A stretch of DNA of 53,709 nt, counting the filler, from Sluysia triapertura (lineage: Eukaryota): NCBI GenBank assembly GCA_046118255.1. It is 4 parts of 4 records of this genome, joined end to end, with 100 filler letters (N's around TTAATTAATTAA, not from the genome) between each part and the next. Parts side by side here need not be neighbours in the genome. Positions count along the whole stretch, not along the records: positions 13,585 to 25,809 come from JBJNIA010127963.1; 3 more parts are not named here. One strand, written 5' to 3'. The position numbers were made by a program, and so were the translations under genes. Below the pieces are notes generated by a model, which was not told the DNA's origin, made no database searches, and saw nothing but the letters and a program-made list of their open reading frames with translations. How positions within the stretch are numbered: the first letter of the stretch is position 1; the number at the start of each line of letters is the position of its first letter. Below are positions 8,007 through 38,520 of this stretch, piece after piece.

Positions 8007-8612
8007 TGTGGTGGTTAACCTTTTTATTCAAAATTTAAATCATTATTACACATACTTAATATCACTTTTCTTAACATTTCACGTTTTATTTTTCAGATTC
8101 ATTAAAATCTTTTTACATTTTAAAACATTTTAAATTCGCAATCTCACAACATTAATTAAGATTATACTTACATTAAACTTATATTTCAAAGATTATTCAA
8201 AACATTTCAAATCCAACATGTCACACTTAAAACCAAATTCCAAACATTTTACCTATTTTTCCATCAAAACCACTAAAACTTTAGACATTTCAATACATTT
8301 CGAGTTCACAATTCGTCAGCAATAAAATCATCCATTACATCAAAAATCATTAAATTCATAATTCAAAATTATTTTAAAATACCATTATAATCAAAATGGA
8401 ATTTCTTTTAACATCTTTAACGACGTTGTTATTTTTCTTTTATTCATGCATAAATGTTCCTTAAAAGATAATTAGAATCAAAGAAATTTAATTCATTTTA
8501 AAAAGAAAAGAAAAATTTTAAAGAAAGTTAGAAATAAAGAAATTTAAAAGAGATTTATGTTTTTATCATTTTGATGTCATTTTATTTTGTTTTATTATTT
8601 TATTTTATTTCA

Positions 8613-8651
<39 letters not shown>

Positions 8652-8870
8652 CAACATTATTACTACTATGTTTATTACTATTATTGATTATAATTCATTA
8701 TTTTAATTTTACATTCACAGTAACTGTCATTATGGACAGTATTTTGATGGATTTAAATTGAAATTTTATGACAGACATAGTCAACAGTTTTGTTGTAAAA
8801 TCACTTTATTATTGGCCATCCAATTCTTTTTTAATAAATCAGGTTAAAGAGTAAAAATAGTAACAAAATT
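8007..8870 (+). repeat. LTR/leader-like repeat upstream of the RBFOX-like ORF
   Basis: Starts TGTGGTGG on a C/A-rich, G-poor strand. aaaacattttaaattcgcaat and gagttcacaat are shared with the minus strand of 38210-38520. Paired segments ctgtcat...atgacag lie near 8725-8776. Confidence 0.5.
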
Positions 8871-13656: not shown

Positions 13657-15541
13657 ACTTAAAATAAAACTTACAAAATGTGCATGGGCAGAAGAAAAAG
13701 TATCTTCTTAGGACACATAATATCTAAATATGGTATCAAACCAAACCCAAGAAATATTGAAAAAGTAATCAAGTTTCCTCAACCTGATAATGTTAAAAAG
13801 GTTCAGAGTTTTCTAGGTCTGGATAATTATTATAGGAGGTTTGTTAAAAATTTTGCAAAACTCGCTCAATCCCTCAGAATCTAACAAAGAAGGACACAGA
13901 ATTTAAATGGACCGAAGAACAGAAAAAGGCATTTAAAGAACTAAAGGAACATCTAACTACAGTACCAATATTAATATTTCCGGTATTTTATAAGCCTTTC
14001 CTACTAACTACAGATGCTAGTAATTATGCTATTGGCACAATTTTAGGTCAGAAAGACAAGAATAATCTTGAAGCAGTCATAGCACACGCCAATCGAAGAC
14101 TTAACAAAGCAGAAACGAATTATTCGACTGTAGAGAGAGAATGTTTAGCAATTGTATGCGCATGTAAATTGTTTAGACATTATTTATTATGACAAAAAGT
14201 TTATTTGTACACTGACCACAAACCCTTGACATATTTATATAATGACAGAGATGAAGTCAGTAGACTTAACAGATGGTTTAATAAACTGTCCGAATTTAAC
14301 TTGGAAATTGTTTATAAGCCAGGTAGCTTAAATAACGCAGCTGATTGTATGTCTAGATTGACGAATGTAGACAACAAGGGAAATATCAATTTCATACAAA
14401 TTATGTCGGTATCGGGGAAAATGCAAAACTCTGAAGAAATTATTAAACATCAGAGAGAAGATAAAGAGACTTCCGCTCTTCTAGATGCATTAGCTTAAGG
14501 AACTTTAAATGAATTACAAGCAAAAAGATTAGCTATCATGGATGGAATATTAAGATTTAAAAACATTTAAGATTTATACCTATTCTAATACAATTTCATG
14601 ACGGACAATTAGGAGGTCACTTATCAACAAGGAAAACATTATCCAGAATTAAAAGTAAATACTATTGGGAAAATATGGAATCCGATATCAGAAAATGGTG
14701 CAAAGGCTGTTCAATATGTTGTCGACGAAAGAATACTGGACAAAAGACCAAAACCTATGCCAGTACCACTATCATCAATGGAATTTACCGCTATGGACAT
14801 TATGGGTCCTCTTCCAGAAACCATTAATGGCAATAAGTATATAATTGTATTTGTGGATTATTTGACCAAATGGCCAGAGGCCTACTCGATGCCTAACCGA
14901 AAGGCTGAAACAGTAGCACAGATACTTGTAGAAAAGATAATAAATATAGATATGGAACTCCTAGAAAATTATTAACAGATCAAGGGACTAACTTTACTAG
15001 CGATGTAATCAAATCAGTAGCTAAAATCTTTAATATTCTACGAATTTACACGTCGCTTTACCATTCACAAACTGATGGACTGGTGGAACATTTTAACAGA
15101 CTCTCATCAATATGATCCAATCTTATATATAGCACCATGTCTTTACCAATTTATTTCACTCCGTTTTACCTAATGTATGCTGGTCGATTTGGAATGGGTT
15201 CCACCTACTTCACAGAAATTCCGGAATACGTGACAACAATGAGAGAACAATTACAAGACGCACGGAAACTGGCATGTCTTCAAATTAAATACTCTCAGGA
15301 AATATATAAGTACACATATGACAAAACAGCAAAAGAACATACATTTAAGATAGGTGACGAGGTGTTAATAGATTATCCAATAACTAAACCTAGTCAATCA
15401 CCTAAGTTACATAAACCTTTTAAAGGACCTTATCTAATAACAAAAGTTAACGATACAAATGCGTTTGATAAAGATCCTAATAAAACTAATTCTGAAACTT
15501 TTGCAGCACACGTCAATAGATTCAAGATGGCACCAATATAA
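13657..15541 (+). mobile_element. pol: Ty3/gypsy pol of element A (RT thumb, RNase H, integrase with GPY/F), frameshifted
   Basis: FLGHIISKYGIKP, VQSFLGL.NYYRRFV, TTDASNYAIG, YSTVERECLA, YTDHKPL, ADCMSR, HHCC motif (H...GGH...CKGC), MDIMGPLP, TDQG, KPFKGPY, HVNRFK. Confidence 0.95.
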
Positions 15542-15579
15542 TTTAAGAAATAGAAAAGTTTTTTAAATCAAAACTGAAA

Positions 15580-16242
15580 GTTCAGCCAAGGCACAAAGAT
15601 CGAGATAAACCACCTTCAATTCATGTACTACGAAATAAACAAGTGGTATTTATGATGCATTCCCATGGAAATGACCTGGCTCATATAATGCAAAACGTGC
15701 GATTTAACGGGCGATGTGTTAGAGCAATTGTAGATACCGGTGCTACTGTTTGAGTAGTTCATAAAAACTTTTTAACTACGTGGGAATCAGTGTTCTTAAA
15801 TAGACCAACTCTACTAACATATAATGTTAATCAAACACTCATAAATATTAATGGAACTTTATTATGTTATATAGAAGTATTAGGGCAATATGTACAAGTT
15901 TTAGTAAATGTTTGAGATAATAGCCCATACGGAATAATATTAGGCACGGACGTTATCAATAAATTAGAAGATCTGGTCATTCACAGTAAATATGGCTTTA
16001 TAAAAGTACCACCATGTTCAAATATGATTATACCGCAATTATTAGTTCCACAAGTTGGTGATGTATTAATCTTATATCAAATGCCAATTTCGAATCCACC
16101 ATTACAAGTTCCAGACTTACTATTACCCGATATTGTTGAATCTACACTTCATTTATCTAATATATCATGGGGATCACCATCGACAATTACATCGGAGGAA
16201 AATTCGGATCAGGAATCGGATCAGATGTTCAAGAAACAGTAA
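15580..16242 (+). pseudogene. Second retropepsin-like aspartic protease downstream of integrase (element A)
   Basis: RAIVDTGATV at 15721-15750 and YGIILGTDVINKL near 15930-15965, with in-frame stops. Confidence 0.85.
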
Positions 16243-18470
16243 TGATAATGACTAGTATAAGAAAAAGAAATTGTTTTAACAAAAATTGTTTTAGTAAAAT
16301 ATCTTGTTGGTTTTATATCTTAACTGTAATTTTTCTATCACTTATAATTAATGCTATAGCAATAGAAACAGATGAAGAATACAAAAATATGAATATCGCT
16401 ACAAATCACGGTAGAGAATACAAAATAATGATTAGCGATATATACAATCAATACTGGAAATTTGAATTTATTTCCAAGAAAATGATTTTACGACACAAAT
16501 TTGAAATTTATTGTATCTATTTAAAACCCTTACTAGTAGGAAGACCACATCATTTAAACGGTATCCCACATTGTCCGCATTATGGTTACAGACCTGTGTT
16601 AATAACTTTTCTCTAGACACCCCAAGAAATACACGAGATATCTCGAAATTTATCAAACAAATAGATCAATTAAGAAATGGAGAAACAACAAGAATACAGA
16701 CAACCTTATCCGATTATGGTGCAATTAAGAGACAGATAAATAATTTAAACAATTCAACTGCAAAAGGTACAACGAACATTCTTATAAATTCTTGATAATG
16801 TTACTAATTTTCACAGTACTATACATATTTTGGATTATACTCTATTTGTTTAAAATTGGTAAAAAGATCTTATAACTTTAATTTTGATTATGATAGTTAC
16901 AGTAGTCCAATGCGACGAACAATCCTTTAAAACGGAATACTTTGAATTCTATAATAGAAATAATGAAGTAAAGGTTAAAATATTGAACCAAAACATTCAT
17001 GCCAAATGTGCCTGTTTAAAACCCGCCAAACTTAATTTTAGTTCATGGATCAAATACGAAAATTATATTAATAGTGAATTGAGATAACCAGTCACGGTTT
17101 GCTCAGATATTTTGCCTATCGAAGGTAGACATTATAGTGAAAATCCATCATTCATCAAAACATTCGCATTTTGCATTTAAAGGAACAAGAAAACATTTAA
17201 CAATATTAGAAATATTACGGAATATTGTTTGTAATTGCTTTAGCTATAGTAGTATTGACTATTATTATGTTTGTTTCAAACAAATGTCGATACCCATGCC
17301 TACCACATAACAATAATAATGATGCATACACAGTTCCACATCGAAACAATTATGCTCTTCCACCAGGTATGCCGATACTTCCACCTCCAATTTATGAATA
17401 CGCCACAAATAATCAGATACCACTTATATATGGGTTCTGGCAAATGACTCAAGTAAAGTCTACAATTCTGATATGTATTTACTTATCTTACAAATCAAGT
17501 ACAAATTATTTATCAGGAAACATCGCACCTAAGATAATTCTAGTATCAACTCAAAAGGATATTTACGCTAAAATATTAACAGATAAGGTTAAATTATTTG
17601 CTGTTCAAATAAAATGTTTTTTAAAGGATTTCTACTGGTTTATATCGTATATTGACCTTGTTGAATATCAACTATTCAACGTAAGGTTAGCTATAAAAAT
17701 GGAATATGAATTTCAAAGTGATTCAAAGATTATTTTACTAAGCTACTACAAAATAATAACTAAACCGTTTGTGTTTCAACAATCACCGACATACAACACT
17801 AAGACTAAACCATCTGTCTCTAAGAAATCATCAACGTTAATTGAATTTCGAATGATCATCTATCGATATCTTGGAAATGTTGTACGTATTCATAACCCGT
17901 CATACAATAATACGTTATTGATCGCCTACGAATTGAGTGATGATTTACGTTATGGAATAATATTACCTAATGATACTATTCGTTTGTATCATCTTCCGAA
18001 TAATAGACTTTTGTTCATTAAATTTGGATATTAAGAAAAGCAGAATTATATGATTCCAAAGGATTTTGGCCAACAATCAGATACTATGACGTGCAGGTAC
18101 CAATTATAGATAAGTACGAAAATGATTTAGATACGAAATCAGAAAAAACGTTCAAAAGTGATAACAACGTTATGAAAATACCTTATGATGGGAATAGGAG
18201 TATAAACTCGAGTAATACCAATCGGAACAGGAGCATAAGTGCGAATACTACAGTATAAGTATGAATATAATTAAGGAGACTACTAGTTGTTCAATTATAA
18301 AAGAATCCAACAATAACTTTATCACAACTATAAACTATATTTTAATAATAACTTCTTTGTTAACATTAATAATTAACTTTATTATCCCAAAGTTTTACTT
18401 GTTTATTAGGCAGAGGGCCCATTTTTTTCATATAAGTTTTAATACATATTGCATAATTGACCACATGTAA
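16240..18470 (+). pseudogene. Accessory membrane polyprotein of element A (signal/TM segments alternating with about 3 ectodomains)
   Basis: Colinear homology with 35096-37216, e.g. IYCIYLKPL/IYCIYWKPL, YFEFYN/YFDFYN, PAKLNFSSW/PARLNFSLW, YTVP/YSVP, ITKPF/IKTKPY, GFGQQ/GFGQQ. Confidence 0.8.
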
Positions 18471-18600: not shown

Positions 18601-18711
18601 AACTAAAATAGCACTTAACTTTTATAGGATTTTTAACTTCTAATATTTTTAAAACTTTCAATATTACTTATGTATTATATTATTATTATATTTTTTAGCT
18701 AGATAACATCA

Positions 18712-18918
18712 ATGTCATTCTGTACGTGTGCCATTTGCTTACACTGTCTTAGGAATTACTTCGCCAAAACCTCCCCTTGTCTCCACCGTTTTCACTTTTT
18801 CTGTCTATACGATCTTTTTGAATCCTCCCCTTCACCTTTACCTAACTGTCCCTTATACCGGACCACCATTATAAACGCTCCTTCCGTCGTTCCTATGAAT
18901 TCACGGTTAAGTACATAA
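18712..18918 (+). CDS. Small RING-H2 finger protein (element A accessory; last Cys changed to Tyr)
   Basis: CAIC...PCLHRFHFFC...NCPLYR, preceded by an acceptor-like ttttttag. A homologous RING lies at 34647-34848. Confidence 0.75.
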   Translation: MSFCTCAICLHCLRNYFAKTSPCLHRFHFFCLYDLFESSPSPLPNCPLYRTTIINAPSVVPMNSRLST

Positions 18919-19029
18919 CAGACAATTCGGAAAAACCCGGTATTGATATATATCAGCCGGCGTTTGGGAATGTATTTATTTTGATAGCCTGTCGCCAATT
19001 TGGTAAGGTTGTTACATGGCCTTGTTTCG

Positions 19030-20019
19030 AGATTAGAGAAATAGGTTTTACGAAAAATTATTCGAATTATGTTAATGCTTACATATTTATTTAATGTAGG
19101 TTTAATATTAAATATTACATGACAACGTTGTCTTAAGGCGAAACTAATATTGGAAACTTTATTGTTCAGCAATTGCAAATACATTATTTTTTTATTCGTG
19201 TTTACTTTCTTTAACAGATACATATTTCTTTTAAAAGTTAGATTATTAGTATTTATATAAACAATAAAAATTTTATAATGAACCAAACAGGAATTGTTTA
19301 TTATCATGAAATCAAATAGGCAGTATAAAAACTTTAAATTGTTATCGAATCTCGAGTTCAGAATTACTTGTTTTACTGCTGATTTTATTGCTGCACCTCG
19401 TCGTATTTCATAAATCTGAGTACTGGACGCATAATCTAAAAAGGATAATATACTAAAATAATGAATTAAATAAAAAAAATTAGAAATTACTAAAGATATG
19501 ATTTCAATATGGCCGTTATTGTTAGCATTTTGGAAAATCCTAGAATCGCTAGACCCTCTTGTCTTCACCAGATGAATGTATATGTGATAACTCAATTTGG
19601 AGATATAAATCAAATTGATATTGAGTCTTCGATCCGAAATTAGTTACTTTGGATGTAACATCATAAAAATTCGCAATAATAGATCTAATTGAAATCGACA
19701 TAGAATTTGATTTGTTACATTCAGGGACAACATGATCATGGCTAACTTCGATTGATTTCCAGTAGTGTTGGATTAAAGGATACTGAGTCACAATATCATA
19801 ATTTTCATTGAGAAAAATCATTATGAATGACTTTAAAATAGCCTTGTAATTAGTAACTTCATTTGAGAAATAAACCATAATAGAATTAAACATCACATCA
19901 CTTTCATCAGTTAGTTTTGCCAAGTCAAACACATTGTAAGCGTTTTCCGAATTCGCAGAAAAATGGCCATAACTAAATCGATGAACTACTTTTATGGGCA
20001 TCTTTAAAGCATGGTTCAT
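19030..20019 (-). pseudogene. Unassigned ORFs downstream of the PIP4K fragment
   Basis: Overlapping ORFs 19549-20019 and 18792-19613 with no recognisable motif. Confidence 0.3.
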
Positions 20020-20138: not shown

Positions 20139-20746
20139 GCTTAAGTTGATACTTTATGCAAATAGGAAGGTGGACTAAACGCATTTTTTGTGACTAACAT
20201 TTAGTAAATTTGATCAGATACTATTAAACGATACATAGCTAAACGATACATAACTAAAGGGTTTCTCCATACGAATCAACAATATATGCATGATAAGCTT
20301 CTAATAAATAATGTACTTGTTCAACATCTTTGCTAGTTATAATCTCAAAAACAAATTGATGATCATATGTTAAAAGATATTTCTTATTCGGACTCCATTC
20401 TGACTGCTTTTTAGTAAAGGTATTAAAATAATCCGAATCTTTAATATTAAATCTTTCTTTTAAATTTTTAAGCATCAAAGTACAATATTCTTTGAATTTA
20501 TATCTACTAGGCATATTTTCTTTGCTAAACACTTGGTTATGAACTTTTACTTTCATGTAAGATTTAAAATCATAGTTTAGTAAAACAGCTCTTGATTTTA
20601 CATGAATCATTTGTGTTAATGAATAATTAACTTCCCACATAAGAACACATTTGAGAGGCTCTTTTGAACGAAATAACTTTAATTTTTGACGGCCTCCTTT
20701 TACTTTTTGTCTTGATTGAGTTGCCGTTATTAAAGCATCACTATAC
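20139..20746 (-). pseudogene. PIP4K2: Intronless, truncated PI5P 4-kinase type II (PIP4K2) retrocopy
   Basis: QKLKLFRSKEPLKCVLMWEVNYS...DFKSYMKVKVHNQVFSKENMPSRYKFKEYC...YHAYIVDSYGETL, then MYRL...VTKNAFS...KYQLK in shifted frames. Confidence 0.9.
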
Positions 20747-20829
20747 TGGAAATTTTAGATTAATAGTAAGTGATTTTTAAAAGGTTTTAATACTATTATT
20801 GTTGTTTAATGATTAGTGTAATCAAATTT

Positions 20830-21750
20830 GATTTATTAACTTTTCTATTTTTAGACCGTCTTTCCTAGTTGGTCATCCAATCAGGCCTTATCTAGTGTAT
20901 CATTAAATGAAATTCAATCTGACTGGATGACAGGCAGAGAACAAAATCAATTAGTAAAAATAACAATTACAAATGGTTGGCCATCATCAGTGTTGACACG
21001 ATAATGAAGATTGTGATGAGCAATGTCAACACTGGTGATGGTAGTAACAAATTGAATTGGTTAATAAAATTTTGATTATTAAATACTTTCGTAATTTAAT
21101 AATAATAATAACAATATTGTTATTATTATTATTAACAAAAAGGAAAAAAGTAAAAAGATGTATAATTTTCTTTTATCGAACTCACACGATCTTTCTTTAT
21201 TTTAATCTTGACTTTCTTAACATATAAAAGATAAAAAATTAAACAAAAATTGATAAAATAGAATGAAATAGCGACGATAACAGGATGCACTATGCTCGAG
21301 CTATCGTTATTTCGTTGTATAAAATTGAATTCCTTAAAAATGTACACGATCTTCTTTAATTCTTACAGATTTTTAACATGTAGTAAATTTAAAGTGTATT
21401 TGGGACTAAATTTCTGAGTAATAATTGTTTATTGAAAGAATTAATAAGTATAATTAACCTTTGAAGATATAATAATTGAATTGAATCGTGAGATGAAACA
21501 GAGAATGTTAGAATGAATTCTTAGATATTGATTGAAGTTTATAATAGAAAACAAGATTTAAATATTTGGAAGATCGTGGATAAAAGGCCTATTGAGAAGA
21601 TTGTAATTTAAAAAATCTAAAAGGGCAATTACAATACAACTGTTGGTATATTTTGTGTGATTTGTTTGTTTGATGTTTTTGGTGTTGTTGAAGATTATGC
21701 ATAGATGAATAGTGAATTTAAGATGTAATTGATTCGAAGATGTGTGTTGA
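20830..21750 (-). repeat. Leader/LTR-like repeat, copy 1 (homologous to 30338-31250)
   Basis: About 900 bp of colinear similarity, including ttcgaatcaa, aattcactattcat, ctcgagcatagt and two hairpins. Confidence 0.85.
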
Positions 21751-21969: not shown

Positions 21970-22757
21970 TTATTGATAATCGTAGCGGTGCTGCAATTGA
22001 CATTCCGGTTTTTTTATAAGAACAATTTTCTTAATAAGTTTTTCAGATAAAATGTTCTTATTTACCAAACTATTTATATAAACTAGTTTTGTACATTTTA
22101 TCAAATATCCTCTTATTACACATTCATATCGCTGAATAAATATTAAATCGCCTTCTCTTACTGCTTGAAAAATATCGAAAGAGTTATCAACAATTAATTT
22201 TTCAACAAATACTAGAGGCATATCTAATTTTTTTTGTAATATCGTCTATATGTACACACCACTTTTCTTTAAGTACATCGTTCAATTGTAATGATATCAA
22301 TCTGAGATATGAAGAGTCAATCAAAATATTATTTATTAATCGTAAATTATTGTCATGAAATAACATATTACTAACATATGATTCAATAGTCTTTAAATCA
22401 ACTTCTAAAGTATTAGATAACACAAGTAACGAAACTTTATGGAAAATATTATTTATTAACATATTACTAACGAAATAACATATTATAACGAAATAACATA
22501 TTACTAACACATGTTTCAATAGTCTTTAAATCAACTTCTAAATTATTAGATAACGCGAGTAATGAAACTTTATGGTTTTGGAGTTCTAATTCTTCATAAA
22601 TTTCATTTGATATTTAGAACAACTTTAACTTGTTACTAGATATCAAAAAATTCATTCTATCAATGCAATTCCTTTCGCTTGATTTATCAATTGATGAAAC
22701 TTCATGCGCTATCTTAAAATCAGAGGCTAATATCTTAATTTCATGCCAAGTTGTCAT
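21970..22757 (-). pseudogene. UFL1: Intronless N-terminal retrocopy of E3 UFM1-protein ligase 1, with an internal duplication and frameshifts
   Basis: MTTWHEIKILASDFKIAHEVSSIDKSSERNCID resembles the UFL1 N-terminus (W.EI..LA.DF..A......SERNCI). Also LIDSSYL...LNDVLKE and IRGYL...INSL. 22380-22443 is duplicated at 22510-22575. Confidence 0.85.
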
Positions 22758-22900: not shown

Positions 22901-23800
22901 TTAGTTGTTACCATTTTCTCGTGTCTCTGGTTCCAAACTATGACGTCCATTGGTTGTAAGTGGCTGCTGAGATGCATCAGAACTGTACATACCACAACTC
23001 ACTGAATCAGTACGTGACAGATTATCTACTGATATTATCGTTCCTTGGTTAGTACTAGGCATATTAAGACCTGATGATTTGACCAATGAAAATGCAGCTT
23101 CAAACTCATAAACTTTACTAAGTGCATTTTGTTTCAATATTCGTTCTTCTTTCAGCTGCTTTTTAATGAGTTTACTTCCCTAGTGGATTTGTTGGTAACG
23201 GTTTTGTGTTTTAATATTGTCTGAAAAAACTTTAGTCATATTGACAATTTTGCTGTTCTTTTCTGTAATTTCTGACACTAATTGATCAATATGTATTTGT
23301 TTCACCAATGCTAATTGCTGTTCTGTTGCTGCTTTTCTTTCAGAAGCATGTTTCTTTTCATTTTCTCTTTCATTTCTTTGTCTAAAGTTTTCCGCAAATC
23401 ATTCAATTCTTTTTCAGTGCCAGTTAAATAGTGTTTCATACGTTGTAATTCTTCGACCAATAACTGTACTTTTTGATCTGATTTCATTTGTATAAACGTT
23501 ACGTTTTTTTATGTTGATCACGTTCAGAACAAATATCGGCTAATGCTTTTTGAAAATTAATTACATTTTAAGTATGTCTGATGCCAATTAAAGATCGATT
23601 TCATAGGACTCATCCTTTGACGAATGTGAATATTTTCTTGTTGAAGTGATGCCAAATTTTTCGATAACTTCAAATTACGTTTTGCTTTGTGTGTATTTGG
23701 ATTGGTTTTGGTATTTTCATGTTTATTAGGTGATTTCAAAACACAATCTTTATCATATTCTGCACAAAATTTATCGTTACACAGTGATGGATCGAGATCA
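22901..23800 (-). pseudogene. Decayed intronless coiled-coil protein fragment
   Basis: Frameshifted coiled-coil reading: LASLQQENIHIRQR, KKHASERKAATEQQLALVKQ, KQLKEERILKQNALSKVYEFEA. Confidence 0.5.
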
Positions 23801-25113
23801 AATATATTGTATAGTATAAAAAAAATTGAAGAAAAAAAATAGAAAAGCAGATTGATAATAAGGATAAAAGAAATAATAATAATAATGATAACAATAACGT
23901 GATTATTATGTTTATTAATACTGAAATGTTGATGTTGAAATTTATTGTGAAAATTATTATAAAAGTTATCATAAAAGTTATTATTTGATAATCATATTAT
24001 ATACAATAATGACTATAATTATTATATATATTTTAATACGATCAGAATTGTAATAATAATAGCAGTAGTACGTGATAATTAGGTGCGATGATTATGTTTG
24101 TTTTTTAAATGAGTTTAGTAGTTTGTTTAATAATCTGTGTACATGTGAAGTGTTTTTATGTGATATAGAATTATATTATGAATAATTACACAGTTTGTAT
24201 GCTACATTACTTTTGAATTAACCTAATGTTTTAAACAAGCATAACAATACTGGTAGTGAAAGAAAAGTTGAATTTCATGAAATAAAATCAATGTGCTTAC
24301 AAGACAAATCATTAATCTAGTAAAGACATATTCAACTAGATTAATGATTTGTCTTTACTGTCAGCATGCAAAATGAACAAATAGTATAATTTTTCTTAAG
24401 TTTTGACTTATTTTATGTTTAATCCCGCATATCAACAACAATTAATTGATTTTATGACAGAAAGCGTTCAAAATTTGCGTTTATAATTAGCCTTCATCAT
24501 GTAACTAAATGAAAATTATTACGGGTATTTAGTAAACAATATTAAAAACTATCTTTTAAGTTATTGTTTTACAAAAAGTACTAATTTCGTACTGTGCGCA
24601 ACAGTGAAAGCAATTTTATCTACTATTTCGCGCCTACGGTTACATATGTCCCATTAGATTTTCAAATATAATTTTTTTTCCTCTGTGAATGAATTTTATA
24701 TATCGATTAGGATTCATTCGTCCCATAACATTTCCTTCAATAACAATGATAATGATAATAATAATAATAGCAAAATCTAAATTTAGATTCTAAAGAAATA
24801 TCTTCGAAAAAAATTTATTTCAGACGCATCTTTTTAAAAATAGATGAAAATAATTTATTATAAAATATGCAAAGATTCATTTCGGTTTATTTCAATACAC
24901 TATTAAAATCATTAAAAATTTGTATAATTCAAAAATTTAGTAATTTTAAAATTATTTTAATTAATTTGAAAGATAGTCGACTATAAATAGAATAATTAAA
25001 ATTTAGTGCAACCATTATTTCATATTTATCATAAATTTATCATAAATAAATTCCATAAAATTATTTAAAAACTAAATAACAGACAATGCTACAAGATTAT
25101 TAATAAAAAATAC

Positions 25114-25350
25114 TTTAGATATAAGTTCGAGGTCTTTCTTGTTTGCATGGATCACTTCTTCTTTATTAACAGATCCAATTTCAAAACCATCACATTTAAT
25201 ATCGACAATATTTAAAGGGTTTATTCCAATATCTAGTGACTGAGCACCGGTTGATCCTTCTTTGACATCAAAAAAGAATAATTTAAATTCACTAAGGGCC
25301 AAATACTGCTTCTTCCAACCTTTTCTTATTCCGCCTTGCTTATGAGGAAC
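25114..25350 (-). CDS. CDC42BP: Exon of an MRCK/CDC42BP (genghis khan)-like kinase, PH domain
   Basis: AG/GT-bounded 237-nt exon encoding VPHKQGGIRKGWKKQYLALSEFKLFFFD...SVNKEEVIHANKKDL. Confidence 0.8.
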
Positions 25351-25673
25351 CTGAAACATGGAAAGTAAAAAAAGTCATGTATTTTTTCCAAATTTATCAG
25401 TTTATTTATGAATTTATGAAGTTTAGTACCAAATTCGTTTGAAAAGCTTACGAAAGAAAAATTAATTATAATGGATTGAAATGAAATTTTGACGTCATTT
25501 TAGTTTTCGTATTTGTTCTACATTATGCATTTAAATTGGTACTTCATAGATTTTAAGCAGAAGACTAACATACAATACAATAATATTCAGAAAAAGTCAA
25601 TAATGATTTTTACGTTAGTTTCAATGTGAACTATATATTAAATAATAAAAATTTATTTTGATAGATAAAATAC

Positions 25674-25739: not shown

Positions 25740-25740
<1 letters not shown>

Positions 25741-25809
<69 letters not shown>
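25741..25809. repeat. (AAT)n microsatellite at a contig end
   Basis: Perfect AAT repeats running into Ns. Confidence 0.95.
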
Positions 25810-29909: not shown

Positions 29910-31270
29910 TGTTGTGGTCAAACTCAACACTTACTAAAATTTCATTAAAAACCAAAATTTATTTTTTCCCTTTTCTAATTATTCCATCAATCACACATCC
30001 ATCTATTTCATATTTTTTAAATCAAATATATGCCCTCAATCCAAATCACGAATACACCTAACATTACTAAATTACATTAACTAACTCACCAGAAACAATA
30101 CTAGACATTTACAATAATTTAACAACAAACACATCTGAAACAATCCAACTAATACTTTCGAACCTTCATTTTACACTGCCCTGTAACAATTAATACCAAT
30201 ATTTAATAATATTTACTCAATAGTTTATTGGTTTAAATCAAATCACAATCGCAACATACAACATATAAACCATAAGTACAATTAATACTATTTCACAACA
30301 TCAATAAATTTACTCGAAACATATAAAGTAGCTACTTCACACCTTCGAATCAAGTAAATCATTTCAAATTCACTATTCATCAATGCATAATCATCATTAA
30401 CACAGAACATCAACACCAAAACACCAAACAAAATAATCACACAAAACATAGCATAATAACATCCTCAATATACAAAAAGTTATATTGTAATTCCCCTTTT
30501 AAATTCATTAAATTACAACCTTCTCAATAAGTCTTTTAACCATTATGTTTCAATACATAAATCTTGTTTTCAAACATAAACATCAATCAACATCGAAGAA
30601 CTTATTCTAACATTCTAATTCACTTCAAGACTCAAATCATATTATATCTTCAAAAGGTTAAATATATTTATGAATTCTTTAAAACAATTCTTTAAAACAA
30701 TTCTTTAAAACAATATATTTTAATCTACTTCAACAGGATAAAACTTTTCAAAAATTCAAAGTAAATCTAACACAGCTTTACAAAATTCAATGTTATAAAA
30801 CGAAGCAGCAACGATAACTCGAGCATAGTATATCCTGTCATCGTTGCTCTTTCATACAATATCAGCAATTTTTATTTCATTTTATTTACAGATGTCAGAA
30901 TAAGAAAAGAATTAAGAAGGAAAAGTCTTGTAAATTTTTAAAGAAATTCATGCGAATTTTATTATTCTTGTTAATAATAATAACAACATTATTATTGTTG
31001 TTATTATTATTATCACATATCCAAAAATAATTTCATTAAAGTTTTTATAAATGTCAAAATCTTGTCGCTACCATCACCAGTGTTGATACTATGTATCACA
31101 TTTCTCATTAATGTGTCAACACTGATGATGGCCAATCATCAGTACTAATAATTTTTGCATGCCACCCAATCAGAGCTGATATTGTTCAGTGTTTTGTCTT
31201 GAGGCTCTGATTGAATGACCAACTAAAATCGAAATTGCCGGATCTAAAAATAAAATGATAATTAAAAAAT
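29910..31270 (+). repeat. Leader/LTR-like repeat, copy 2
   Basis: Begins near TGTGG at 29913. 30338-31250 is homologous to the reverse complement of 20850-21745. Confidence 0.8.
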
Positions 31271-38209: not shown

Positions 38210-38520
38210 ATTATTGTGAACTTGAATTGTTTTGGCATAAATTCTGAAATATATTTGAAGAGCTTAAGTGTAAATTGTGATTAGAATGTTATGAAATTAT
38301 GAATTGAAAATGTTTTTAATGGAATTAATGCCTTGAATTAAGTATGATTTTGATGTTGAAATTGTGAATTTAAAATGTTTTGAAGTATGAAAAATGTTTT
38401 AACGGATCTAAATAAATGTAAAATATAGAAAAGATTTTGATAAATTGTGAAAAGGTAAAAATATAAAATGTTAATGAATGTTATGATGTAATTGTTTGAA
38501 TTTTAAACCAGAGGTTTACA
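38210..38520 (-). repeat. LTR/leader-like repeat related to 8007-8330
   Basis: Shares aaaacattttaaattc[a/g]caat and agttcacaat. Confidence 0.5.

What the first reader, a model, noticed from the sequence alone, without database searches (positions are those of the whole stretch)
20139..21750. The same ~0.9-kb leader is followed by different captured host genes (PIP4K2 here, PDE-GAF at 31.4 kb)
Seen: 21745-20850 (-) and 30338-31250 (+), on different contigs, are colinear homologues. Similarity stops roughly 100-150 nt before the ORFs, after which one copy has an intronless PIP4K2 N-terminal half and the other an intronless PDE5/11 N-terminus plus GAF-A. A related leader family (8007-8870, 38210-38520) precedes the RBFOX chimera. 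Inference: an LTR-type cassette that repeatedly captures 5' portions of host mRNAs at a fixed site, i.e. a cargo-swapping gene-capture system that may be part of the giant LTRs. The cargoes retain regulatory or dimerisation parts and lack complete catalytic domains, which could be dominant-negative.
Basis: partly seen in the sequence, partly recalled or inferred. Interest (0 to 1): 0.85.

Follow-up and report, generated by a model that had tools for sequence, protein, structure and literature searches.

The report
Decayed host-gene fragments beside a repeat
This stretch of an AT-rich flatworm genome holds a broken, intron-free copy of the first ~200 codons of a lipid-kinase gene (PIP4K2) behind ~0.9 kb of non-coding DNA, as one unit in a row of similar dead gene fragments; it looks like transposon-mediated gene-fragment capture, not a working gene, and the claimed "same leader, different cargo" could not be tested with the one piece in hand.

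Summary
Bases 20751-20153 (-) encode the N-terminal ~200 residues of PIP4K2 (PDB 1bo1, E 2.8e-41; closest relatives are flatworms, 50-56% identity). The copy is continuous across three intron positions found in other flatworm PIP4K2 genes.

It is dead as a kinase:
- no in-frame ATG at its start;
- one stop and one frameshift;
- the ATP-binding lysine and G-loop are replaced;
- only 13 of 18 near-invariant residues are kept.

The rest of the gene is absent from the piece.

The leader (21745-20850) is non-coding and G-poor. It ends in two strong hairpins and matches no RNA family. It occurs once in this piece, so its homology to another contig is untestable here; every search for the source genome came back blank.

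The PIP4K2 piece is not alone. On the same strand lie a UFL1 N-terminal fragment that starts at its own ATG and an MRCK PH-domain fragment. Neither is preceded by leader-like DNA. A broken Ty3/gypsy pol lies on the opposite strand.

Best reading: a repeat-borne mosaic of reverse-transcribed host mRNA pieces, now pseudogenic. No LTR hallmark was found in this piece, and a dominant-negative role is unsupported. Interest is moderate.

The parts
20153..20751 (-). PIP4K2-like gene fragment covering the N-terminal ~200 residues, i.e. about residues 10-214 of the 499-aa Clonorchis protein. It is pseudogenic: 1 in-frame stop and 1 frameshift, both tied to a 15-nt tandem duplication, and no in-frame ATG at the N-terminal end.
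   Evidence: (1bo1, E 2.8e-41). Tandem repeat. Conserved-column count 13/18.
20752..20849 (-). It ends in a pyrimidine run plus AG just before the homology starts. It could be the parent's 5' UTR or an intron flank.
Evidence: Direct reading.
20850..21745 (-). The 'leader': non-coding and G-poor on the minus strand, and single-copy within this piece.
   Evidence: Composition. No ORF above 76 aa. No Pfam match. No Rfam match above noise. No second copy. No TIRs.
20981..21041 (.). Hairpin 1 in the 3' part of the leader: 18-nt arms, 94% complementary, 25-nt loop.
   Evidence: the 241-nt region folds with z = -3.4; 1 of 200 shuffles does as well.
20872..20931 (.). Hairpin 2: 13-nt arms, 92% complementary, 34-nt loop.
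21096..21135 (.). Perfect 40-nt AT-rich palindrome inside the leader.
22020..22757 (-). UFL1-like (E3 UFM1-protein ligase 1) gene fragment. It runs from its own ATG over Pfam profile positions 1-212. It is pseudogenic: 1 in-frame stop, 1 frameshifting 133-nt tandem duplication, and 1 further frameshift.
   Evidence: Duplication.
25075..25374 (-). MRCK-type PH-domain fragment. It is internal to the parent protein; no neighbouring C1 or CNH homology was found.
   Evidence: (PH_MRCK, 3.6e-19).
22904..23398 (-). Unidentified protein-like reading frame, a coiled-coil-like stretch followed by a Ser/Thr-rich stretch, interrupted once. Probably another gene fragment.
   Evidence: codon-position bias.
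18795..20019 (-). Two overlapping long stop-free runs (156 aa and 283 aa) directly downstream of the PIP4K2 piece, with no recognisable family.
13848..15538 (+). Tail of a Ty3/gypsy-type pol (RNase H, integrase zinc-binding domain, integrase core). It is broken (at least 2 in-frame stops and 3 frameshifts) and cut at the left by the piece's edge. It is convergent with the gene-fragment array.
18703..18915 (+). Degenerate RING-H2 finger on the plus strand, at the end of the plus-strand coding-like run.

Best explanation
The finding is one unit of a same-strand mosaic of dead host-gene fragments in an AT-rich flatworm genome. In minus-strand order the mosaic reads MRCK PH domain, an unidentified frame, the UFL1 N-terminus, the leader, then the PIP4K2 N-terminus. 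I take the organism to be possibly a triclad planarian; that is inference.

Most likely mechanism: the fragments are cDNA copies of parts of host mRNAs. They were stitched into a repetitive carrier by template switching of a reverse transcriptase during retroelement replication (transduplication). The 0.9-kb leader would be non-coding backbone of that carrier.

Two of the fragments start at, or next to, the parent's start codon and run for ~200 codons. That is what a polymerase copying an mRNA to its 5' end and then jumping to another template would leave.

The cargo now evolves as pseudogene. It is a record of past capture, not a set of working dominant-negative proteins.

Shown: the identity, extent, continuity and decay of the fragments; their shared strand; the non-coding nature and hairpins of the leader; the adjacent broken gypsy-type pol.

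Inferred: the RNA-level origin, that the carrier is a retroelement, and that the leader belongs to the carrier.
For: - Three unrelated host genes are represented within 5.3 kb on one strand.
- The PIP4K2 piece is continuous over three intron positions seen in five other flatworm loci.
- The UFL1 piece is continuous over ~210 profile positions apart from its own breaks.
- The UFL1 piece begins at its ATG, directly after an in-frame stop. The PIP4K2 homology begins at residue 2 of the Fasciola protein.
- Decay: counted breaks; ATP-binding lysine K150 replaced and G-loop lost (alignment); 13 of 18 near-invariant columns kept, against 18 of 18 in 22 of 35 relatives.
- No further PIP4K2 homology anywhere in the piece.
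- A broken Ty3/gypsy pol lies 5 kb away.
- Flatworm retroelements are known to carry host-like domains, and trans-spliced or retro-copied sequences are known to integrate next to LTR and LINE elements (PMC6431247; PMC12582326).
Against: - The parent genes of this species could not be reached, so intron loss in the parent is not excluded.
- The PIP4K2 homology begins right after a pyrimidine run plus AG and ends right before a GT. A DNA-level copy of one large exon therefore remains possible.
- No LTR pair was seen in the piece (PBS, PPT and TSD were not tested), and the only pol is on the other strand.
- The two hairpins sit exactly at the end of the leader. That fits a rolling-circle terminus better than a retroelement leader.
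- The MRCK piece is internal, not 5'.
Confidence: 0.42

Rival explanations
1. DNA-level capture by a rolling-circle (Helitron-like) or similar DNA transposon. The leader would be the conserved 3'-terminal part of a non-autonomous element. Its hairpins would be the termination signal. The UFL1 and MRCK pieces upstream would be earlier internal captures. The PIP4K2 exon downstream would have been taken up, or merely flanked, when the terminus was bypassed.
For:
- A CTAG follows hairpin 2 by 3 nt.
- Several co-oriented fragments of different genes lie upstream of a conserved terminal segment, which is the usual look of gene-carrying Helitrons (PMC3288121 and PMC4778049 abstracts).
- The PIP4K2 piece has splice-site-like borders.
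Against: - No Rep/helicase is present anywhere in the piece.
- The base after CTAG is G, not the canonical T.
- Both the UFL1 and the PIP4K2 pieces lack introns over ~200 codons, whereas DNA-level captures normally keep introns.
- No 5' terminus was identified.
Confidence: 0.2
2. There is no capture at the leader at all. The leader would be an ordinary interspersed repeat that happens to lie next to unrelated pseudogene fragments in a repeat-rich, rearranged region. The similarity between contigs would simply end at the repeat's border.
For: - The leader has no coding, RNA-family or terminal-repeat feature of its own.
- Two other gene fragments in the same array have no leader.
- The region is a patchwork with tandem duplications and palindromes.
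- LTR/Gypsy elements are enriched at rearrangement breakpoints in planarian genomes (PMC11410931).
Against: I could not check that account.
Confidence: 0.25
3. The PIP4K2 piece is a true exon of a (possibly recently inactivated) PIP4K2 paralogue. Its other exons would lie beyond the piece, with the leader and the gypsy-type element sitting in its introns.
For: - The borders are acceptor-like and donor-like.
- The homology ends within a few residues of an exon boundary in trematode genes.
- Planarian introns are often expanded by transposons (PMC11410931).
Against: - The exon contains an in-frame stop and a frameshift.
- The ATP-binding lysine and G-loop are lost, and 5 of 18 near-invariant residues are changed.
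- No other PIP4K2 homology is found in the 6.5 kb downstream.
- Fragments of two other genes lie immediately upstream on the same strand.
Confidence: 0.08

Closest known systems
Gene-fragment capture by LTR retrotransposons (maize Bs1; rice and sorghum LTR elements) and retroviral transduction of host mRNA
   Same: Intron-free pieces of host coding sequence, co-oriented and placed behind non-coding element sequence. Several genes can be sampled by one element, and the cargo usually decays.
   Different: Here no LTRs, PBS or same-strand gag/pol were found around the cargo. The carrier is undefined. The host is a flatworm, for which I found no published case. My knowledge of Bs1 and retroviral transduction is from memory plus the review PMC6431247.
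Helitron gene capture with 3'-end bypass (maize, bat Helraiser)
   Same: A conserved terminal segment ends in a hairpin. Several fragments of unrelated genes lie in one element. Different sequence follows the old terminus in different copies.
   Different: There is no Rep/Hel, no canonical CTRR-T terminus, and the fragments lack introns.
Pack-MULEs
   Same: A bias towards the 5' ends of genes and fragments of a few hundred bases.
   Different: No long terminal inverted repeats flank the fragments. Pack-MULE capture is at the DNA level.
Burro / GYPSM1 giant gypsy-like elements of planarians
   Same: An AT-rich flatworm genome, a gypsy-type pol and host-like domains (e.g. RING) associated with the element (PMC6431247).
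   Different: In Burro the host-like domains sit in frame inside the element's polyprotein. Here the identified fragments are on the opposite strand, are separate, and are dead. Membership of the window's pol in the Burro family was not tested.
LINE-mediated processed pseudogenes and template-switch chimeric retrocopies
   Same: Intron-free copies of mRNAs, with chimeras formed by template jumps.
   Different: Those keep the 3' end and poly(A) of the mRNA. Here the 5' end is kept and no A-tail follows.

Membership tests
   The longest direct repeat in 12.2 kb is a 133-nt tandem duplication inside the UFL1 piece. The piece may be too short to hold a pair.
   The only pol domains (13848-15538) are on the plus strand; the leader and cargo are on the minus strand.
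   The leader's borders cannot be fixed from one copy. There is no tRNA gene in the piece and no tRNA set of the species at hand.
Retroelement-mediated (RNA-level) gene capture | Cargo lacks the introns of its parent gene | tested here: inconclusive
   The copy is continuous over intron positions 74/75, 110/111 and 156/157 of other flatworm PIP4K2 genes. The parent gene of this species is unavailable.
Helitron | Rep/helicase protein (autonomous copies) | tested here: not met
   No such Pfam family was found in any stop-free segment of 28 aa or more from 18400 onward, or of 45 aa or more across the whole piece. Non-autonomous copies would lack it anyway.
Helitron | 3' hairpin followed within ~10-20 nt by CTRR and a T of the target | tested here: inconclusive
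   Hairpin 2 spans 20931-20872. It is followed after 3 nt by CTAG, but the next base is G.
Pack-MULE / TIR transposon | Terminal inverted repeats flanking the captured fragments | tested here: not met
   No inverted repeat longer than 41 nt (78% complementary) exists in the piece, and none at the leader's ends.
LINE-type processed pseudogene | 3' end of the mRNA with a poly(A) tail | tested here: not met
   Only the 5' ~600 nt of the coding sequence is present, and no A-run follows the homology.
Functional PIP4K2 (type II PIP kinase) | Open frame with start codon, G-loop, ATP-binding lysine and C-terminal catalytic core | tested here: not met
   - No in-frame ATG; 1 stop and 1 frameshift.
- K150 of 1bo1 aligns with Glu, and the G-loop is not kept.
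- No Pfam PIP5K hit.
- No C-terminal homology in the piece.
Known structured RNA (Rfam) | Score at or above a family's gathering threshold | tested here: not met
   0 matches at E <= 1 over the piece. In the leader alone, only hairpin noise 20-50 bits below threshold.

The most novel reading that the evidence does not exclude
A flatworm retroelement family that repeatedly takes up the 5' ~0.6 kb of spliced host mRNAs at one junction behind a conserved leader, analogous to retroviral oncogene transduction. This would build arrays of gene fragments that might feed small-RNA or regulatory pathways. Such recurrent, site-specific 5'-mRNA capture has not, to my knowledge, been described in animals outside retroviruses.
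Probability: 0.15. Interest if true: 0.75.

Novelty: new member of a known kind. Interest (0 to 1): 0.4.

Why it matters
If the recurrent leader-plus-cargo pattern holds genome-wide, this would be a clear animal example outside retroviruses of systematic capture of host gene fragments by a mobile element. Such capture is a source of chimeric transcripts, pseudogene families and possibly small-RNA targets in flatworm genomes. If it does not hold, this is an ordinary patch of pseudogene fragments and repeats. It is then mainly useful as a warning for gene annotation: spurious PIP4K2, UFL1 and MRCK gene models.

Tried and rejected
- **Looking for the source genome or other copies.** All blank: the search for homologous proteins with the PIP4K2 piece, a leader ORF and the 283-aa ORF; exact look-ups of two window ORFs; hairpin pattern scans of metagenome and viral contigs.
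- **A second leader inside the piece.** None found by self-blastn or by local alignment against shuffles.
- **A shared short motif upstream of the three fragments,** such as a spliced-leader remnant. None above shuffles. Planarian SL sequences could not be obtained from the held papers, so that test was not run.
- **Structured RNA in the leader.** Rfam negative.
- **Structure prediction of the 283-aa ORF.** pLDDT 31, unusable, so no fold search was made.
- **PDB and Pfam on the unidentified frames.** Nothing.
- **Real-gene reading.** Rejected for the array as a whole, because three unrelated, broken fragments lie within 5.3 kb.
- **Mitochondrial or rDNA origin of the leader.** Rejected: no Rfam or tRNA hits, and the base skew does not fit.

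Full report
**Scope.** The piece has no N and is 28% G+C. Nothing in it looked human.

**1. The observation**

*The PIP4K2 copy is real.* The minus strand from 20754 to 20257 is a 166-codon stop-free run.
- It matches human PIP4K2B (PDB 1bo1, residues 17-179) at E 2.8e-41, and the alpha and gamma isoforms nearly as well.
- A scan of 1.84 billion representative proteins gave 269 hits. The best are Fasciola and Clonorchis PIP4K2 (54-56% identity) and Macrostomum (49-50%).
- The organism is therefore a flatworm. Its AT-richness and its absence from the protein collections make a triclad planarian plausible, but that is inference.
- tblastn of the three flatworm proteins against the piece extends the homology in another frame. 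The outer bounds become 20751-20153, i.e. Clonorchis residues 10-214 of 499.
- No other PIP4K2 homology occurs anywhere in the piece.
- Pfam's PIP5K model does not fire on the fragment.

*The copy is intron-free relative to other flatworms.* I mapped the exons of four flatworm orthologues on their own genomic loci, plus one flatworm Logan contig.
- Fasciola, Clonorchis and the monogenean Cichlidogyrus have introns at fragment residues 110/111 and 156/157.
- The Logan contig L001, whose exon is 62% identical to trematode PIP4K2, has the 110/111 intron.
- Macrostomum has an intron at 74/75.
- The window copy runs straight through all three positions.
- Two features point the other way. The homology starts just after a pyrimidine run plus AG and ends just before a GT, within a few residues of an exon boundary in trematodes.

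*The copy is dead as a kinase.*
- It has no in-frame ATG at its N-terminal end.
- It has one in-frame stop and one frameshift, both linked to a 15-nt tandem duplication.
- In the alignment to 1bo1, the G-loop is not kept and Lys150 aligns with Glu. That Lys150 is the ATP-binding lysine is my own knowledge.
- Among columns that are at least 90% conserved in 35 full-length relatives, the window copy keeps 13 of 18. Twenty-two of the 35 relatives, including all close ones, keep 18 of 18.
- It is as far from trematodes as Macrostomum is, but further from non-flatworms than true flatworm orthologues are.

*The leader, 21745-20850 (-).*
- It has no stop-free run above 76 aa and no codon-position bias.
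- It has no Pfam hit and no Rfam hit above noise.
- It has no tRNA gene and no terminal inverted repeats.
- It is strongly G-poor on the minus strand.
- Its 3' fifth carries a perfect 40-nt AT palindrome and two hairpins: 18-nt arms at 20981-21041 and 13-nt arms at 20872-20931. The 241-nt region folds with z = -3.4.
- It occurs once in the piece.
- Its similarity to another contig, which is the core of the finding's title, cannot be checked with what I was given. Every route to other copies was blank.

**2. Surroundings**

*The PIP4K2 piece is one of several host-gene fragments on the minus strand.*
- 25374-25075 is an MRCK-type PH domain (Pfam 3.6e-19; C. elegans MRCK-1 structure, 2.4e-7) with no neighbouring C1 or CNH homology.
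- 22757 to about 22020 is the N-terminus of UFL1, Pfam profile positions 1-212. It begins at its own ATG, directly after an in-frame stop.
- The UFL1 piece is broken by one stop, one frameshifting 133-nt tandem duplication and one further frameshift.
- 23398-22904 is a protein-like frame with codon-position bias but no identifiable family.
- Downstream of the PIP4K2 piece lie stop-free runs of 156 and 283 codons. These are far longer than the ~12-codon mean expected from the measured composition (my arithmetic), and they match no family.

*No leader elsewhere.* Neither the UFL1 nor the MRCK piece is preceded by leader-like DNA or by a motif shared with the PIP4K2 upstream region.

*The plus strand.*
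- 13848-15538 is the RNase H and integrase tail of a Ty3/gypsy-type pol.
- It has at least 2 in-frame stops and 3 frameshifts and is cut by the piece's left edge.
- A coding-like run continues to about 18.4 kb and ends near a degenerate RING-H2 finger at 18703-18915.
- The retroelement and the fragment array are convergent.

**3. How it most likely arose**

Three or more unrelated, broken gene pieces on one strand within 5.3 kb cannot be real genes. Two of them are intron-free N-terminal ~200-codon pieces that start at or next to the start codon.

My best reading (0.42) is capture at the RNA level. A reverse transcriptase copies host mRNA to its 5' end and switches templates. This leaves 5' mRNA segments head-to-tail in a repetitive carrier whose non-coding backbone includes the leader. 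The cargo has since decayed.

Rivals:
- **DNA-level capture by a Helitron-like element (0.2).** The hairpins sit exactly where similarity is said to stop, and the PIP4K2 piece has exon-like borders. Against it: no Rep/Hel, no canonical terminus, and no introns in the cargo.
- **An ordinary repeat that merely neighbours pseudogene debris (0.25).**
- **A true, interrupted PIP4K2 paralogue (0.08).**

**4. Comparison with what is known**

Capture of gene fragments by LTR elements, Helitrons and Pack-MULEs is well known, mainly in plants (PMC6431247). Planarian Burro elements carry host-like domains, but in frame within their polyprotein (PMC6431247). In parasitic flatworms, partial spliced-leader sequences next to LTR and LINE elements have been read as integrated, reverse-transcribed transcripts (PMC12582326). 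I found no paper describing arrays of captured gene fragments in flatworms. The membership tests are in the table; none is fully met.

**5. Verdict**

The sequence facts about the cargo are confirmed and sharpened. The leader-recurrence claim is untested. The mechanism is plausible but unproven. I classify it as a new member of a known kind, with interest 0.4.

**Slips and omissions to declare**
- To count the breaks in the pol tail and in the gene fragments, I worked out the frames of neighbouring stop-free segments in my reasoning. Tool outputs show segment bounds. I give only counts here.
- I did not fetch other copies of the gypsy-like element (see referred step).
- The spliced-leader test was left out because no SL sequence was available from a tool.

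Noticed in passing
window 22020-22757 (-): UFL1 (E3 UFM1 ligase) N-terminal pseudogene fragment that starts at its own ATG. It contains a 133-nt tandem duplication whose copies are 84-89% identical.
   Followed up: partly
window 25075-25374 (-): Isolated MRCK-type PH-domain fragment. No adjoining C1 or CNH homology was detected.
   Followed up: partly
window 18795-20019 (-): Stop-free runs of 283 and 156 codons in 28% G+C DNA, with no family, no homologues and no usable fold. The 156-codon run shows coding-like codon-position bias; the 283-codon run does not.
   Followed up: partly
window 22904-23398 (-): Coiled-coil-like plus Ser/Thr-rich reading frame with coding-like base periodicity, interrupted once. 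The parent gene is unidentified.
   Followed up: partly
window 15547-18467 (+): An almost continuous chain of stop-free segments follows the integrase. It includes segments with predicted membrane-spanning starts (16161-16613, 17210-18031) and a very weak aspartyl-protease hit (E 0.005). It may be extra coding capacity of the retroelement or a second element. Not resolved.
   Followed up: no
window 18703-18915 (+): Degenerate RING-H2 finger in which the last zinc ligand is replaced. It lies at the point where coding-like signal switches from the plus to the minus strand.
   Followed up: no
window 24301-24355, 24880-24971, 22016-22061, 22596-22655: Several palindromes lie between or at the edges of the gene fragments. 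Whether they mark junctions was not tested.
   Followed up: no
window 25740-25809: Perfect (TAA)n microsatellite, 23 units, running into the piece's right edge.
   Followed up: no
L001 2749-3380: Logan contig from run SRR24765318 that carries a flatworm-type PIP4K2 first coding exon (62% identical to trematodes). It has the same 110/111 intron position as neodermatans. The organism is unknown.
   Followed up: partly
window 21184-21201 and 21344-21361: An 18-nt motif occurs twice, 160 nt apart, inside the leader (83% identity). Possibly chance.
   Followed up: no
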